This document shows positions 850-13,772 of a DNA stretch of 64,000 nucleotides, piece after piece; position 1 is the first letter of the stretch, and each line of letters begins with the position of its first letter. The stretch covers positions 4,255,905-4,319,904 of the forward strand of contig NC_083435.1 of assembly GCF_020745735.1 (NCBI RefSeq), in the 5' to 3' direction. Under the pieces are notes generated by a model. The model made no database searches, was not told the origin of the DNA, and saw only the letters and a program-made list of their open reading frames with translations. This DNA is from Hemiscyllium ocellatum. Lineage: Eukaryota. Both the position numbers and the translations under genes were made by a program.

Positions 850-1881
850 ATGGCCGACGGCAGCCGGAAGGTGGACGATGCCGGGGACTCGGGCGGAGGG
901 GGGAGGCCGCCCGGTTCGCAGCCTCGAGCAGGGGCCGAGAAGGGGGCGGGTAAGAAGAAGAAGCAGCAAACCCAGCAGCAGCAGCAGCAGCAGCAACAAC
1001 CGCAGCAGCTGAACCAGACACAGCAGCAGAATTTGCAGCAGCAGCAGCAGCAGCCCCGCTCCCCGCAGCGCCGCAAGAAGAAGGAGCTCACCATGGCCGA
1101 GCAGATCCTGCAGGTCGCCGCCGCCACCAAGGAGCGGCGCGGCATCTCACTGGCCGCCCTCAAGAAGGCGCTCTCGGCCAAGGGCTACGACTTGAGCCGC
1201 AACAACACGCGGGTCAACCAGACGGTGAAGAACCTGGTCCGCGACGGCTCCTTGGTGCAGACGGCGGGCATCGGCGCCTCGGGCTCGTTCCGCTTCAATC
1301 GGTCCGCCGTCGGTGTCGGAGGTGCAGGCGGCAGCGGCGGCTTCAAGAAGGACAAGGCCAAGGCCAAGGGCAAGAAGAAACGTGGGGCGGCCAAACGCCG
1401 GCACCAAAACCCCGCCTCCCGGAGGTCGCCACCGGCCCGCCTCCGGAGGAAGTACACCCGGCGCAGAGACACAGTTGGCGCCGCCGGAGGAGGGACTTGG
1501 ACGGGAGCAGGTTCCAAGGGTCGGAAGGTGACCGTCCGGACTGTCCGCCGCCGCCGCCAGCAGCAGCAGCAGCAGCAGCGAGCCCGCTCCCGCCGCGACG
1601 GGGGGAGAGGAGGCCGCCGCAAACCGCGGGTCACCGCCACCGGCCGCCGGGGTCCGGCCAAGAGCGTCCGCCTGAAGACCAGCTCCAGCCTTTCTCCCTC
1701 CGTGGCCACCTACTATTACTACTACTACCCGTCCCCCGCCCGGAGGCCGGCCCGGCCCTACGGCAAGTACAAGCCGGCGGCCCGTCAGCGCGGCCGCAGG
1801 GTGCTCGGGTACGGCGGCTCCCGCGGGAAGCCGCGGGTATCCCGGGGCAAGAGGCCGGGCGTCCGCCAGAGGAGAAACTGA
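850..1881 (+). CDS. Histone H1-related, protamine-like protein (343 aa): polyQ N-terminus, winged-helix globular domain, Arg-rich tail
   Basis: Intronless ORF. The segment EQILQVAAATKERRGISLAALKKALSAKGYDLSRNNTRVNQTVKNLVRDGSLVQTAGIGASGSFRFN aligns with the vertebrate H1 globular domain. Good Kozak context, CpG-rich, followed by a histone stem-loop. Confidence 0.93.
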   Translation: MADGSRKVDDAGDSGGGGRPPGSQPRAGAEKGAGKKKKQQTQQQQQQQQQPQQLNQTQQQNLQQQQQQPRSPQRRKKKELTMAEQILQVAAATKERRGISLAALKKALSAKGYDLSRNNTRVNQTVKNLVRDGSLVQTAGIGASGSFRFNRSAVGVGGAGGSGGFKKDKAKAKGKKKRGAAKRRHQNPASRRSPPARLRRKYTRRRDTVGAAGGGTWTGAGSKGRKVTVRTVRRRRQQQQQQQRARSRRDGGRGGRRKPRVTATGRRGPAKSVRLKTSSSLSPSVATYYYYYYPSPARRPARPYGKYKPAARQRGRRVLGYGGSRGKPRVSRGKRPGVRQRRN

Positions 1882-1991
1882 AACGCCCGCTCAGCCATTT
1901 CTTTCCGGGGGAAGAGGACGGAGCCGCTCTGCCGCCTCACACTTATCTCTCTCTCTCTCTCTCTGTCTCTCCCCGTTTCTCCTGTACAAAC

Positions 1992-2035
1992 GGCTCTTTT
2001 CAGAGCCACCATACCGCGACCAGAAAGAATAGCTG
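1992..2035 (+). terminator. Histone mRNA 3' stem-loop and downstream element (gene 1)
   Basis: GGCTCTTTTCAGAGCC (1992-2007) then ACCA, with purine-rich AGAAAGAATAGCTG about 15 nt downstream. Confidence 0.93.
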
Positions 2036-2160
2036 GATCACACCCATCATTTGAGCTTTATTTTCCACAGCGCAGTGAAATCCTGAAGAAGCATTCCTGG
2101 ACTGGAAACTTGTAACTCCTGCTTTCTCTCTCTAACAGGTGCAGCCGCCAGAGTTGCTCA

Positions 2161-2573
2161 GAATTGAATTGAATTTATTGTCGCATGTAATGCTTTGTCT
2201 TGCGAGTAATACAGGCAGATCCCAAAGTTAAGAAGCACAGACAGTAAATAATAGGTAAACAGCGGCAAAACCAAAAACACAGGTACAGGTGAATGTTAAA
2301 GAGTTTCTGAGTCTATTCTAACAACAGTACGGTAGAAACTTCTTTGGTTGGTGCGTGTGTTCAGGCTTCTGTACCTTCTCCCCAATGGTGGAGTTTGTAG
2401 AAAAACGTTACCAAGGTGGGATGAATCTTTGAGAATATTGGAGGCCTTTCCTTGACAATGGGCCTGGTAGATGGATACTATAGATAGGTCGGTCTTTGTG
2501 ATTGTCCGGGCAGAGTTCACCACTCTCTGTAACTGTCTCCAATCTTGAATGGTGTAGTTACCATACCCGGTAA
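2161..2573 (-). mobile_element. Rex1/Babar-like LINE 3' fragment (resumes briefly at about 3491-3510)
   Basis: Minus-strand translation ASNILKDSSHLG...GRRYRSLNTRTN resembles Rex1-type RT C-termini; (GAATT)n tail. Interrupted by a CR1 copy. Confidence 0.55.
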
Positions 2574-3490
2574 TGATACAAAGCTGGGTGGCAGGGTGAA
2601 ATGTGAGGAGGATGTTAGGAGATTACAGGGTGACCTGGACAGGTTAGGTGAGTGGGCAGATGCATGGCAGATGCAGTTTAATGTGGATAAATGTATGGTT
2701 ATCCACTTTGGTGGCAAGAACAGGAAGGTGGATTACTACCTCAATGGAATCAATTTAGGTAAAGGGGCAGTACAGAGAGATCTGGGTGTTCTTGTACACC
2801 AGTCAATGAAGGTAAGCATGCAGGTACAGCAGGTAGTGAAGAAGGCTAATAGTATGCTGGCCTTCATAACAAGATGGATTGAGTTTAGAAGCAAAGAGGT
2901 GCTTCTGCAGCTGTGCAGGGCCCTGGTGAGACCACACCTGGAATACTGTGTGCAGTTCTGGTCTCCAAATTTGAGGAAAGACATTCTGGCTATTGAGGGA
3001 GTGCAGCGTAGATTCACGAGGTCAATTCCTGGAATGGCGGGATTACCTTACACTGAAAGACTGATGCGACTGGGCTTGTATACCCTTGAGTTTAGAAGAC
3101 TGAGAGGGGATATGATTGAGACATAAGATTATTAAAGGATTGGACACTCTGGAGGCAGGAAACATGTTTCCGCTGATGGGCGAGTCCCAAACCAGAGGAC
3201 ACAGTTTAAAAAGTAAGGGGTAGGCCACTTAGAACAGAGATGAGGCGAAACTACTTCTCGAGAGTGGTGGGTGTATGGAATGCTCTGCCGCAGAGGCAGT
3301 GGAGGCCCAGTCTCTGGATACTTTCAAGACAGAGTTGGATAGAGCTCTTAAGGATTGTGGAATCAAGGGTTATGGAGATAAGGCAGGAAGAGGATACTGA
3401 CTGAGGATGATCAACCATGATTATAATGAATGGTGGTGCTGGCTCGAAGGGCAGAATGGCCTATTCCTGTACCTACTACCTATTGATACA
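2574..3490 (+). mobile_element. CR1/HER1-type LINE, 5'-truncated RT and 3' end
   Basis: ORF 2545-3126 with DTKLGG...LQGDLDRLGEWADAWQMQFNVDKC...LVRPHLEYCVQFWSP. Confidence 0.9.
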
Positions 3491-11894: not shown

Positions 11895-12913
11895 CTCGTG
11901 AGAAAGTCCAGGACCCAGACGGCACAGTCTCAGAAGGAAGGGCACCAATTTCAGACTGAGATGAGGAGGAATTTCTCCTTTCAGGGGGTTGCGACTCCTT
12001 GCCACAGAGATAGCTGTGGGAGCAGAGTCCGGGTGTGTGTATACTCAAGGCTTTTCTTGATCAGTCGGGAAATCCAGGGAAAAGGGCAGGCACGTGGATG
12101 TGAGGAATGTCGTATCAGCCATGATCCTGGTGAATTAGGGACAGGAGGATCTAATTATACTCGAAACGTCGACTTCTTCACCTCCTAATGTTGCCTGACC
12201 TGCTGTGTTCTTCCAGCAACTTGTTTATCTACTTACGATCCTACTGAATGACAGATCAGGCTCGAGGGGTCCTAAAGAGTGTTGCTGAACAGCGACCTTG
12301 GAGAGAAGGTTCATAGCTCCTTGAAAGTGGAGTCGCAGGTAGATAGGATAGTGAAGAAGGTGTTCGGTATGCTTTCCTTTATTGGTCAGAGTATTGAGTA
12401 CAGGAGTTGGGAGGTCATGTTGTGGCTGTACAGGACATTGGTTAGGCCACTGTTGGAATATTGCAATTCTGGTCTCCTTCCTATCAGAAGGATGTTGTGA
12501 AACTTGAAAGGGTTCAGAAAAGATTTACAAGGATGTTGCCAGGGTTGGAGGGTCTGAGCTACAGGGAGAGGCTGAACAGGCTGGGGCTGTTTTCCCTGGA
12601 GCGTCGGAGGCTGAGGGATGACCTTATAGAGGTTTACAAAATTATGAGGGGCATGGATAGGATAAATAGGCAAAGTCTTTTCCCTGGGGTGGGGGAGTCC
12701 AGAACTAGAGGGCGTAGGTTTAGAGTGAGAGGGGAAAGACATAAAAGAGACCTAAGGGGCAACTTTTTCACACAGAGGGTGGTACGTGTATGGAATGAGC
12801 TGCCAGAGGATGTGGTGGAGGCTGGTACAGTTACGACATTTAAGAGGCATTTGGATGGGTATATGGACAGGAAGGGTTTGGAGGGATATGGGCCGGGTGC
12901 TGGCAGATGGGAC
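11895..12913 (+). mobile_element. Two CR1-type LINE 3' fragments (about 11895-12270 and 12277-12913)
   Basis: ORFs 12279-12500 and 12461-13027 (LERVQKRFTRMLPGL...GNFFTQRVVRVWNELP). Confidence 0.85.
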
Positions 12914-13025
12914 GAGGAAATATTGCTATTATGGTCATCTGTCCGGTTGAAAATGATCTTTATTATTTGTAACTCAGTGCCACCCTCACATTTAATAAAT
13001 GTCACAAAATTAAACTTGCCGAGAT

Positions 13026-13065
13026 GACTCTTTTTGTGAATATGTCAGTGGCTCTGAAAAGAGCC
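13026..13065 (-). terminator. Histone 3' stem-loop and downstream element (H1-like gene 4)
   Basis: Reverse complement GGCTCTTTTCAGAGCC (13050-13065), then AAAAAGAGTC. Confidence 0.93.
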
Positions 13066-13088
13066 TTTTTCGGTTTTTCATTCTGAAC

Positions 13089-13772
13089 TTATTTCCCCCG
13101 TTCCCCAGCCCCTGGCTCAGCTTCCTCGGAGCCGCTCTCTCCTCCTCCCGACTGTGGTTGAGCTCCCTGCCCCCCGGGCGGCGGCTCAGCGCCCGGCAAC
13201 GGCTCCTTGGTCGCTTTCCGGGCCGCCCGAATGCGGCCACCGGGTCTCCGGACCCCGGTTCCTTTGGCCGCTTTCCTCCGTCCGCCGGCGGTTCTGCCCT
13301 TCTTCCGGCCGCCTCGCGGCGGTTTCTTCCTCCGGACCGGGCTCCTCTTCCTGCCGCGGGTGGGGGCGGCCTTCCGCTGCCGACCCCGAGACTTGGGGCT
13401 AGCGGCGGCCGCTGCTGCCACCGGGCGGTTCTGACCCTCCTGATGGTGCTGCCGGTTGATTTTAAAGGAACCCGATGCCCCGGCGCCTGCCGTCCGCAGC
13501 AGCGAGCCGGCGGACACCAGGCTCCGCACCGCCTGGTTCACCCGCGAATTGATTCGCGGCACGTCGTAACCGGCGGCCGACAGCGCCTTCTTGACGCCGG
13601 CCAGCGAGAGGCCGCGGCGGTCCCGGGAAGACCCCACCGCCTCCAGGATGTGCCCGGACATGGTAGGGGCTCCCCCGCCAGCGGCCGCTACCTGCCGCAC
13701 TTTGGGCGGGCTCCTCCGCCGCCGCCCCTTCCTGCCCCGGGAGGAACCTTCGATCAGGTCGCCCGAAGCCAT
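13089..13772 (-). CDS. Arg-rich histone H1-like / protamine-like protein (227 aa)
   Basis: ATG at 13772 (MASGDL). MSGHILEAVGSSRDRRGLSLAGVKKALSAAGYDVPRINSRVNQAVRSLVSAGSLLRTAGAGASGSFKIN is an H1 globular domain. SP-basic motifs and a stem-loop are present. Confidence 0.92.
   Translation of the reverse strand: MASGDLIEGSSRGRKGRRRRSPPKVRQVAAAGGGAPTMSGHILEAVGSSRDRRGLSLAGVKKALSAAGYDVPRINSRVNQAVRSLVSAGSLLRTAGAGASGSFKINRQHHQEGQNRPVAAAAAASPKSRGRQRKAAPTRGRKRSPVRRKKPPRGGRKKGRTAGGRRKAAKGTGVRRPGGRIRAARKATKEPLPGAEPPPGGQGAQPQSGGGESGSEEAEPGAGERGK

What the first reader, a model, noticed from the sequence alone, without database searches (positions are those of the whole stretch)
1081..13662. The four Arg-rich H1 paralogues appear to derive from the replication-dependent H1 lineage
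Seen: all four globular domains carry versions of the R.G.SL..(L/V)(K/R)K.L...GYD(V/L)...(N/I)...SL signature of somatic replication-dependent H1, not the HPKYSDMI-type H1.0/H5 signature. All four end in SLBP-type stem-loops. Known: protamine-like SNBPs are usually linked to the replication-independent, polyadenylated H1 branch. Inference: an independent origin of Arg-rich linker proteins by local duplication and rapid divergence. Their mRNAs would be under-represented in polyA libraries, which could explain their being overlooked.
Basis: partly seen in the sequence, partly recalled or inferred. Interest (0 to 1): 0.7.

Follow-up and report, generated by a model that had tools for sequence, protein, structure and literature searches.

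The report
Arginine-rich shark linker histones, somatic-type origin
Four neighbouring shark genes encode linker histones with arginine-rich tails that clearly descend from the ordinary, stem-loop-ended H1 lineage. They belong to an old family shared by sharks, rays and chimaeras and are probably used in germ cells, though no tissue data could be read.

Summary
The window has exactly four linker-histone genes:
- H1a, 850-1881 (+)
- H1b, 4872-5357 (-)
- H1c, 7209-7973 (-)
- H1d, 13089-13772 (-)

Each is an uninterrupted ORF followed within 26-113 nt by a histone 3' stem-loop. Their globular domains score 57-76 bits against solved somatic H1.1-H1.4 and chicken GH1, but only 20-33 bits against H1.0/H5. 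Descent from the replication-dependent lineage is therefore well supported.

The "local duplication and rapid divergence" part needs correcting. Each paralogue except H1b has sequence-confirmed orthologues in other shark orders. Two subfamilies also reach rays or skates, and relatives with stem-loops sit in a similar cluster in a chimaera. An exclusive clade of the four window genes is rejected (AU p = 1.7e-25), so the duplications are ancient. All cartilaginous-fish variants form one clade (90/96, or 99/96 without long branches).

Independence from the teleost "protamine-like" H1 is favoured: that gene forms a separate clade and has a poly(A) signal instead of a stem-loop. It is not proven (AU p = 0.22).

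This scan had already noted a similar all-variant histone cluster about 190 kb away in the same genome (s1-147068).

The parts
850..1881 (+). H1a coding sequence, 343 aa. Globular domain at 1084-1308. PolyQ N-terminal tail and an Arg-rich C-terminal tail.
   Evidence: ORF. PF00538 E = 8.9e-16. C-tail R/(K+R) 0.69. Orthologues in Carcharodon, Pristiophorus, skates and rays.
608..629 (+). H1a promoter core: a CGTCCGCC box followed by TATAAAA.
1987..2032 (+). H1a histone 3' stem-loop (stem and loop at 1992-2007) with a purine-rich downstream element AGAAAGAA.
   Evidence: RF00032 34.4 bits. Pattern match. Flanks.
4872..5357 (-). H1b coding sequence, 161 aa from the ATG at 5357. Globular domain at 5028-5243. 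The most divergent copy, with a 3-residue deletion in the wing.
   Evidence: PF00538 E = 9.2e-10. Model with three helices and a hairpin, pLDDT 72.5, best PDB matches H1.1/H1.4/H1.2 at TM 0.72-0.81. A 166-aa linker-histone gene sits in the same position in C. plagiosum.
5407..5427 (-). H1b promoter core: a CGTCCGCC box followed by TTTAAA.
4782..4826 (-). H1b histone 3' stem-loop (4806-4821, loop TTTG). The downstream element is weak.
   Evidence: RF00032 33.8 bits against a gathering score of 34, E = 2.2e-6..
7209..7973 (-). H1c coding sequence, 254 aa. Globular domain at 7662-7895.
   Evidence: PF00538 E = 2.1e-16. Orthologues in Stegostoma, Cetorhinus, Carcharodon and Heterodontus.
8091..8111 (-). 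H1c promoter core: CGTCCGGT followed by TTTAAA.
7110..7155 (-). H1c histone 3' stem-loop (7135-7150) with downstream element AGAAAGAG.
   Evidence: RF00032 36.4 bits..
13089..13772 (-). H1d coding sequence, 227 aa. Globular domain at 13443-13670.
   Evidence: PF00538 E = 1.7e-14. 93% identical to the C. plagiosum protein. Orthologues in eight further cartilaginous-fish species. Same 227-aa gene model in assembly GCA_020745735.1.
13913..13920 (-). H1d promoter CGTCCGCC box. The TATA-like element after it is degenerate. An AAACACA motif lies about 85 nt further upstream.
13026..13070 (-). H1d histone 3' stem-loop (13050-13065) with downstream element AAAAAGAG. Two AATAAA/ATTAAA motifs follow, about 55 and 85 nt beyond the stem-loop.
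   Evidence: RF00032 38.4 bits..
11034..11843 (-). Neighbouring divergent H2B gene with its own stem-loop (11061-11076). This is cluster context.
   Evidence: Stem-loop 31.6 bits.
16428..16923 (+). Neighbouring H4 gene with a stem-loop (16882-16897). Its promoter has GGTCCG followed by ATAAAA. This is cluster context.

Best explanation
The four genes are functional members of an old family of linker-histone variants specific to cartilaginous fish. The family branched from the replication-dependent, somatic-type H1 lineage, not from the H1.0/H5 replacement lineage.

Shown:
- Each gene encodes a winged-helix globular domain of the H1.1-H1.5 type, flanked by tails in which lysine has largely been replaced by arginine.
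- Each keeps the gene architecture of cluster histones: no intron, a histone 3' stem-loop with, in three of the four, a recognisable purine-rich downstream element, and neighbouring H2B and H4 genes that also carry stem-loops.
- All share a promoter box, CGTCCG(C/G)(C/T), 5-12 nt upstream of a TATA-like element. The same box is present in skate and chimaera relatives. Three of the four lack the classical H1 box and none has a CCAAT box in the 330 nt upstream.
- The duplications that produced the paralogues predate the split of shark orders. For at least some subfamilies they predate the split from rays, skates and chimaeras.

Inferred:
- The mRNAs end by SLBP/U7 cleavage rather than polyadenylation.
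- The proteins bind nucleosomes through the globular domain and compact chromatin more tightly through arginine-rich tails.
- They act together with the variant H2B and H4 of the cluster in germ cells, most likely during spermatogenesis before protamine replacement. I put that last step at about 45%.
For: Gene reality and domain type:
- Four Pfam linker-histone domains, and exactly four in the window.
- A profile of the domains scores 108-111 bits against human H1.1-H1.4 and chicken GH1, 44-50 against H1.0/H5, 36-39 against H1.10 and 18 against B4. Each paralogue alone gives 57-76 against 20-33 bits.
- The most divergent copy, H1b, still folds as a winged helix. Its nearest solved structures are H1.1, H1.4 and H1.2.

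3' ends:
- Stem-loops: six pattern matches against 0.13 expected. Rfam gives 33.8-38.4 bits for the four H1 genes.
- There is no poly(A) signal between stop codon and stem-loop.
- Relatives also have stem-loops: the Leucoraja H1a orthologue (36.1 bits) and two Callorhinchus variants (32.4 and 33.5 bits).

Age and family:
- Orthologues were found and named.
- In the ML tree all 32 cartilaginous-fish rows form one clade, support 90/96, or 99/96 without long rows.
- Subfamilies a, c, d and e are each starred in that tree.
- An exclusive clade of the four window genes is rejected, p = 1.7e-25.
- C. plagiosum has the same gene order as the window. Callorhinchus has a comparable cluster.

Other:
- Shared promoter box.
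- Tail R/(K+R) 0.56-0.69 against 0-0.08 in somatic H1.
Against: - No transcript evidence. The runs that hold parts of the region are only guessed to be RNA.
- No canonical cartilaginous-fish H1 and no H1.0 sequence could be put in the tree. It is therefore unrooted, and the H1.0 question rests on score differences alone.
- With 75 columns, the AU test cannot reject joining the family to the teleost PL clade (p = 0.22-0.25) or to mammalian H1t (p = 0.13).
- The downstream element of H1b is weak, and its stem-loop sits 0.2 bits under Rfam's threshold.
- Subfamily e in skate and chimaera has lost the stem-loop and has AATAAA signals, so the family is not uniformly of the stem-loop type.
- H1d has two poly(A)-like signals just beyond its stem-loop.
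Confidence: 0.72

Rival explanations
1. The shark genes and the teleost 'protamine-like' H1 (Mullus PL-I type) are one ancient jawed-vertebrate germline H1 lineage. On this reading the arginine-rich linker proteins did not arise independently in cartilaginous fish.
For: The closest hits to H1c outside cartilaginous fish include teleost 'protamine-like protein'. Both groups have somatic-type domains. The AU test does not reject one clade (p = 0.22 and 0.25).
Against: In the ML tree the teleost PL clade (98/92) sits among ray-finned-fish H1 proteins, apart from the cartilaginous-fish clade. Its C-terminal tail is lysine-rich (R/(K+R) 0.20). The gene has an AATAAA signal and no stem-loop. The named members all come from a few derived teleosts.
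Confidence: 0.13
2. The proteins are not spermatogenic. They would serve another cell type that needs special chromatin, such as oocytes and cleavage-stage embryos, or nucleated erythrocytes in an H5-like role.
For: No tissue data were obtained. A clustered set of variant H1, H2B and H4 genes could equally supply early embryos. Arginine enrichment is also a feature of erythrocyte H5 (PMC4584325).
Against: By my recollection (not tested here), known oocyte H1 proteins (H1.8/B4) are less basic and polyadenylated. B4 is the most distant solved relative, at 18 bits. Arginine-rich H1 together with a modified H2B is the classical sperm pattern, which is also recollection rather than a test.
Confidence: 0.3
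3. The genes descend from the replication-independent H1.0/H5 lineage, like invertebrate PL proteins, and acquired stem-loops secondarily.
For: This is the general view of how PL proteins arose (PMC13148410, PMC11607694).
Against: Bit scores are two to three times higher against somatic H1 than against H1.0/H5 for every paralogue. There is no HPKY-type motif. The genes are clustered and intronless.
Confidence: 0.02
4. They are decaying duplicates of somatic H1 genes with no function.
For: The tails diverge fast: only 24-49% of positions are identical between shark orders. H1b sits on a long branch.
Against: The ORFs are intact. Globular domains are 84-90% identical between shark orders and 99% identical to C. 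plagiosum. Stem-loops and the promoter box are conserved as far as skate and chimaera.
Confidence: 0.02

Closest known systems
Mammalian testis histone H1t (H1.6), together with TH2B and H3t
   Same: A tissue-specific linker-histone variant that stays inside a replication-dependent histone cluster, next to testis-specific core variants (PMC8025322). It has a somatic-type globular domain and a raised arginine share in the tail (0.28).
   Different: H1t is nested within mammalian somatic H1 in the tree (clade 100/99), so it is a separate and much younger offshoot. The shark tails are far richer in arginine (0.56-0.69). There are at least four or five shark subfamilies rather than one gene. Testis expression of the shark genes is untested.
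Teleost 'protamine-like protein' (PL-I of the Mullus surmuletus type; Saperas et al. 2006, as cited in PMC4584325)
   Same: A vertebrate H1-derived basic protein with a somatic-type winged-helix domain. It is the nearest named hit to H1c outside cartilaginous fish.
   Different: Its tail is lysine-rich (R/(K+R) 0.20). The gene has a poly(A) signal and no stem-loop. It forms a separate clade among ray-finned-fish H1 proteins, although a shared clade is not statistically excluded.
Invertebrate PL-I proteins and avian H5 / H1.0
   Same: H1-family proteins with arginine enrichment, used in terminally compacted nuclei (PMC4584325, PMC11607694).
   Different: Those belong to, or are traced to, the replication-independent H1.0/H5 lineage. 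The shark domains score only 20-33 bits against H1.0/H5 and the genes carry stem-loops.
Canonical somatic H1.1-H1.5
   Same: Globular-domain type, intronless gene, stem-loop and cluster location (PMC3834806).
   Different: Globular domains are only 44-60% identical to somatic references, which are 80-83% identical to one another across bony vertebrates. The lysine of the QTKG hairpin is replaced in all variants. Tails are arginine-rich. The promoter has a CGTCCG box in place of the H1 box and CCAAT.

Membership tests
Linker histone H1/H5 family | Winged-helix globular domain (Pfam PF00538) | tested here: met
   All four pass the curated cut-off of 22.4 bits, scoring 39.1-60.3. The H1b model is a three-helix plus hairpin fold that matches solved H1 domains at TM 0.72-0.81.
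Linker histone H1/H5 family | Three-part layout: short N-terminal tail, globular domain, long basic C-terminal tail | tested here: met
   C-terminal tails of 51-190 residues with 27-32% basic residues.
Replication-dependent (cluster-type) histone genes | Histone 3' stem-loop (Rfam RF00032) shortly after the stop codon | tested here: met
   34.4, 36.4 and 38.4 bits for H1a, H1c and H1d. H1b scores 33.8 against a gathering score of 34, E = 2.2e-6. Offsets are 26-113 nt.
Replication-dependent (cluster-type) histone genes | Purine-rich downstream element for U7 snRNP | tested here: inconclusive
   AAAGAG-type elements follow H1c and H1d, and AAAGAA follows H1a. H1b has only a weak A-rich stretch. 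The consensus is recalled from memory and no U7 pairing was computed.
Replication-dependent (cluster-type) histone genes | Intronless gene lying among core histone genes | tested here: met
   Uninterrupted ORFs. H2B-like and H4 genes with stem-loops lie within 3 kb of H1d.
Replication-dependent (cluster-type) histone genes | Non-polyadenylated mRNA whose level is coupled to S phase | not testable with these tools
The runs holding the region are only guessed to be RNA.
Replication-dependent (cluster-type) histone genes | Classical H1 promoter with an H1 box (AAACACA) and CCAAT upstream of TATA | tested here: not met
   Neither motif occurs within 330 nt upstream of H1a, H1b or H1c. H1d has one AAACACA and no CCAAT. 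All four carry a CGTCCG box next to the TATA-like element.
H1.0/H5 replacement lineage | H5-type globular domain | tested here: not met
   20-33 bits against H1.0/H5, compared with 57-76 bits against H1.1-H1.4 and chicken GH1. No HPKY motif.
Protamine-like (PL-I) sperm nuclear basic proteins | H1-type globular domain with Arg/Lys-rich tails | tested here: met
Protamine-like (PL-I) sperm nuclear basic proteins | Major basic protein of mature sperm nuclei | not testable with these tools
   No protein or tissue data.
Protamine-like (PL-I) sperm nuclear basic proteins | Common descent with known PL clades (here teleost PL) | tested here: inconclusive
   The clades are separate in the ML tree, but the AU test does not reject a union (p = 0.22 and 0.25).
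H1t (H1.6) orthologues | Groups with mammalian H1t | tested here: inconclusive
   H1t is nested with mammalian somatic H1. The forced union costs 10.9 log-likelihood units, p-AU = 0.13.

The most novel reading that the evidence does not exclude
This is part of a complete germline histone set (arginine-rich H1 proteins, H2B and H4 variants) more than 400 million years old, still built on replication-dependent gene architecture. Its H1 members would be a vertebrate, stem-loop-type route from histone H1 towards protamine-like sperm proteins. That route would be independent of the H5/H1.0 route accepted for invertebrate PL proteins and of the teleost PL-I route.
Probability: 0.2. Interest if true: 0.75.

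Novelty: new variant of a known kind. Interest (0 to 1): 0.5.

Why it matters
The accepted account traces protamine-like sperm proteins to a replication-independent H5/H1.0-type ancestor. Here a whole family of arginine-rich linker histones comes instead from the stem-loop-bearing somatic lineage and has been kept for hundreds of millions of years in cartilaginous fish.

If these proteins act in spermatogenesis, they show that the shift from lysine to arginine in linker histones happened more than once and from different starting genes. They would also give a vertebrate system in which the steps from H1 towards protamine-like proteins can be studied.

On the practical side, public annotations name these genes as ordinary somatic subtypes ("H1.3-like", "H1.5-like"), which is misleading. 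If their messages really lack poly(A) tails, standard RNA-seq libraries would under-count them.

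Tried and rejected
- **Read laying.** Transcript ends and expression therefore stay untested.
- **The look-up of sequencing runs.** Runs X1 and X6 of the same organism hold 0.23-0.36 of the sampled words of two sub-regions, but they are only guessed to be RNA. I do not count this as evidence of expression.
- **The search for homologous proteins.** Its word filter returned no H1.0, H1.10 or H1.8, and no canonical shark H1, even at E <= 10. The tree therefore has no outgroup.
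- **The look-up of encoding contigs.**
  - One look-up found no free slot.
  - H1a's exact protein is not on record.
  - No short RNA-like contigs were found for any window protein.
- **H1b as the orthologue of subfamily e.** Both have an RPYR motif just before the domain, and the AU test does not reject the grouping (p = 0.38). However, gene order in Heterodontus does not match the window, and skate and chimaera e genes lack the stem-loop. I leave this open.
- **HINFP / H4 site II reading of the promoter box.** I recalled this from memory, and two paper searches did not produce a citable consensus. It stays a lead only.
- **Prior work on these shark proteins.** Paper searches found none in the open-access library.

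Full report
**What is there.** The first 16 kb of the window hold four uninterrupted ORFs with a linker-histone globular domain:

| Gene | Coordinates | Strand | Length |
|---|---|---|---|
| H1a | 850-1881 | + | 343 aa |
| H1b | 4872-5357 | - | 161 aa from the ATG |
| H1c | 7209-7973 | - | 254 aa |
| H1d | 13089-13772 | - | 227 aa |

All four pass Pfam PF00538, with E = 8.9e-16, 9.2e-10, 2.1e-16 and 1.7e-14. A six-frame scan with an HMM of the domain finds exactly these four and no fragments. They sit with a divergent H2B gene (about 11142-11843, -), an H4 gene (16428-16739, +) and a second short H2B-like gene (24637-24963, +). The sequence comes from assembly GCA_020745735.1. The closest named relative of H1d is from Chiloscyllium plagiosum at 93% identity, so this is a carpet shark.

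**The 3' ends.**
- The 16-nt stem-loop pattern occurs six times in the window against 0.13 expected by chance.
- Four of these copies lie on the coding strand 26, 53, 61 and 113 nt after the stops of H1d, H1b, H1c and H1a. The other two follow the H2B-like gene and H4.
- Rfam RF00032 (gathering score 34) scores 38.4 (H1d), 36.4 (H1c), 34.4 (H1a) and 33.8 (H1b, E = 2.2e-6).
- Stems are identical. Loops are TTTC, or TTTG in H1b.
- AAAGAG- or AAAGAA-type purine stretches follow at the usual distance in H1a, H1c and H1d. H1b has only a weak one.
- No AATAAA or ATTAAA lies between stop and stem-loop. H1d has two such motifs just beyond its stem-loop.

**Which H1 lineage.**
- A profile of the four domains and their shark orthologues (alignment A1) was scored against all solved structures. 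It gives 108-111 bits to human H1.1-H1.4 and chicken GH1, 44-50 to H1.0 and H5, 36-39 to H1.10 and 18 to Xenopus B4.
- Each paralogue alone gives the same order: 57-76 bits against 20-33.
H1b and H1c differ by one-residue shifts. None has the HPKY motif.
- H1b is the most divergent and has three residues deleted in the wing. It still models as three helices plus a hairpin (pLDDT 72.5), and its best solved matches are H1.1, H1.4 and H1.2 at TM 0.72-0.81.
- The somatic-type nature of the domains is therefore solid. It rests on score contrasts, because I could not obtain H1.0-type sequences for the tree.

**An old family, not a recent local burst.**
- H1d has orthologues in Chiloscyllium, Hemiscyllium, Stegostoma, Carcharodon, Cetorhinus, Heterodontus, Scyliorhinus and Heptranchias, and probably Mobula.
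- H1c has orthologues in Stegostoma, Cetorhinus, Carcharodon and Heterodontus.
- H1a has orthologues in Carcharodon, Pristiophorus and the skates and rays Rhinoraja, Leucoraja, Hypanus, Hemitrygon and Narcine.
- A fifth subfamily, which I call e, joins Callorhinchus "H1.3" with Leucoraja, Narcine and Heterodontus proteins.
- An exhaustive profile search found 1442 relatives. The best-scoring group is made of these cartilaginous-fish proteins.
- I built a careful ML tree of 65 globular domains over 75 columns. All 32 cartilaginous-fish rows, including the four window genes, form one clade with support 90/96, or 99/96 after removing six long rows. Subfamilies a (100/99), c (100/93), d (99/96) and e (98/91) are resolved.
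- Forcing the four window genes into an exclusive clade costs 129 log-likelihood units (AU p = 1.7e-25).
- Gene order in C. plagiosum is H4, H1d, H2B, a 255-aa gene, then a 166-aa linker histone. This mirrors the window.
- A Callorhinchus contig carries two arginine-rich H1 genes with stem-loops (32.4 and 33.5 bits) among H3, H2A, H4 and H2B genes.
- The Leucoraja H1a orthologue has a stem-loop at 36.1 bits.
- The e genes of Leucoraja and Callorhinchus have no stem-loop and carry AATAAA signals. The family has therefore switched 3' end type at least once.
- Globular domains are 84-90% identical between shark orders, while the C-terminal tails are only 28-49% identical. Among the paralogues the domains are 42-57% identical. 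They are 44-60% identical to somatic references, which are 80-83% identical to one another. The divergence was early and was followed by constraint.

**Relation to known arginine-rich or germline H1 proteins.**
- A vertebrate PL with a somatic-type domain already exists, however. Teleost "protamine-like protein" is among the nearest hits to H1c outside cartilaginous fish and has the same domain type.
- In the tree it forms its own clade (98/92) among ray-finned-fish H1 proteins. Its tail is lysine-rich (R/(K+R) 0.20). Its gene has AATAAA and no stem-loop.
- These points favour independent origins. The AU test does not reject a joint clade (p = 0.22 and 0.25).
- Mammalian H1t is a testis-specific, cluster-resident H1 (PMC8025322) and is the nearest functional analogue. 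It is nested in mammalian somatic H1. A forced union with the shark family is disfavoured but not rejected (p = 0.13).

**Promoters.**
- All four genes, the Leucoraja a and e genes and three Callorhinchus genes carry CGTCCG(C/G)(C/T), or CGTCCT in one chimaera gene. The box lies 5-12 nt upstream of a TTTAAA/TATAAA-like element.
- In the window the combined pattern occurs three times against 0.08 expected.
- The classical H1 box and CCAAT are absent, apart from one AAACACA upstream of H1d.
- The neighbouring H4 gene has GGTCCG before ATAAAA.
- From memory, this resembles histone H4 site II and the HINFP recognition sequence. I could not document that, so it is a lead only.

**Tails.**
- The arginine share of basic residues in the C-terminal tails is 0.56-0.69. 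It is 0.00-0.08 in named somatic H1 proteins, 0.28 in pig H1t and 0.20 in teleost PL.
- The lysine of the QTKG hairpin, conserved in all the somatic references, is replaced by A, T or S in all cartilaginous-fish variants aligned.

**Expression.** I have no usable evidence. Two runs of the same organism hold 0.23-0.36 of the sampled words of two sub-regions but are only guessed to be RNA. I did not send those places to any search afterwards.

**Reading.**
- Shown: the genes are real and conserved, of somatic-type descent, with cluster-histone architecture and a family-specific promoter box.
- Inferred: SLBP/U7 processing, tighter DNA binding through arginine-rich tails, and a germ-cell role (most likely spermatogenic) together with the cluster's H2B and H4 variants.
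- Earlier notes of this scan describe a similar all-variant cluster about 190 kb beyond this window and also suggest a germline role. These are unverified AI notes and I do not count them as independent support.

Noticed in passing
window 16428-16739: The H4 protein differs from the canonical H4 I remember at about four positions (ENII for ENVI, RDS for RDA, KRR for KRK, TAL for TAM). The Callorhinchus cluster H4 (L001 14156-14467) shares the RDS change. The comparison is from memory.
   Followed up: partly
window 24637-24963: A short H2B-like ORF (108 aa) with an Arg-rich N-terminus. The pattern search found no histone stem-loop nearby.
   Followed up: partly
L001 3621-5211: The two H3 genes in the Callorhinchus variant cluster end in ...DIHLARRIRGERT, not the canonical ending I remember. 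The chimaera cluster may therefore also consist entirely of variants.
   Followed up: no
C-terminal tails of H1a-family proteins (P0048, P0070, P0051, P0045) and L001 12074-12712: A conserved (R/K)PVGRPRK motif near the C-terminus of many subfamily-a proteins and of a Callorhinchus variant. It resembles an AT-hook core. In the window's own H1a it is degenerate.
   Followed up: no
window 19300-24400: A long tandem array with strong C-over-G skew (GC skew down to -0.51). It shows as repeated ORFs with about a 40-residue period on the minus strand.
   Followed up: no
window 28750-35860: Two near-identical 125-aa ORF stretches (28755-29132 and 35479-35856, both minus) flank long plus-strand ORFs of 340, 161, 498 and 248 aa. 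The layout resembles an LTR-flanked endogenous element. I only observed it.
   Followed up: no
window 55431-56921: A repetitive ORF rich in VPGMG / VPGVG / VYGMG units (elastin-like) on the minus strand. The opposite strand reads as a PRDPHPRDPY repeat.
   Followed up: no
P0003 against window H1d: A Hemiscyllium ocellatum protein only 89% identical to H1d lies on a contig of a different length (69.7 Mb against 49.3 Mb). This suggests a second H1d-like copy elsewhere in that genome.
   Followed up: no
P0042 (Platichthys flesus, 405 aa): A flatfish protein with two H1 globular domains and arginine-rich linkers (R/(K+R) 0.58) groups with the teleost PL clade.
   Followed up: no
window 14276-14345: A sub-threshold Rfam hit to mir-665 (42.5 bits against a gathering score of 52). 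It is probably chance.
   Followed up: no
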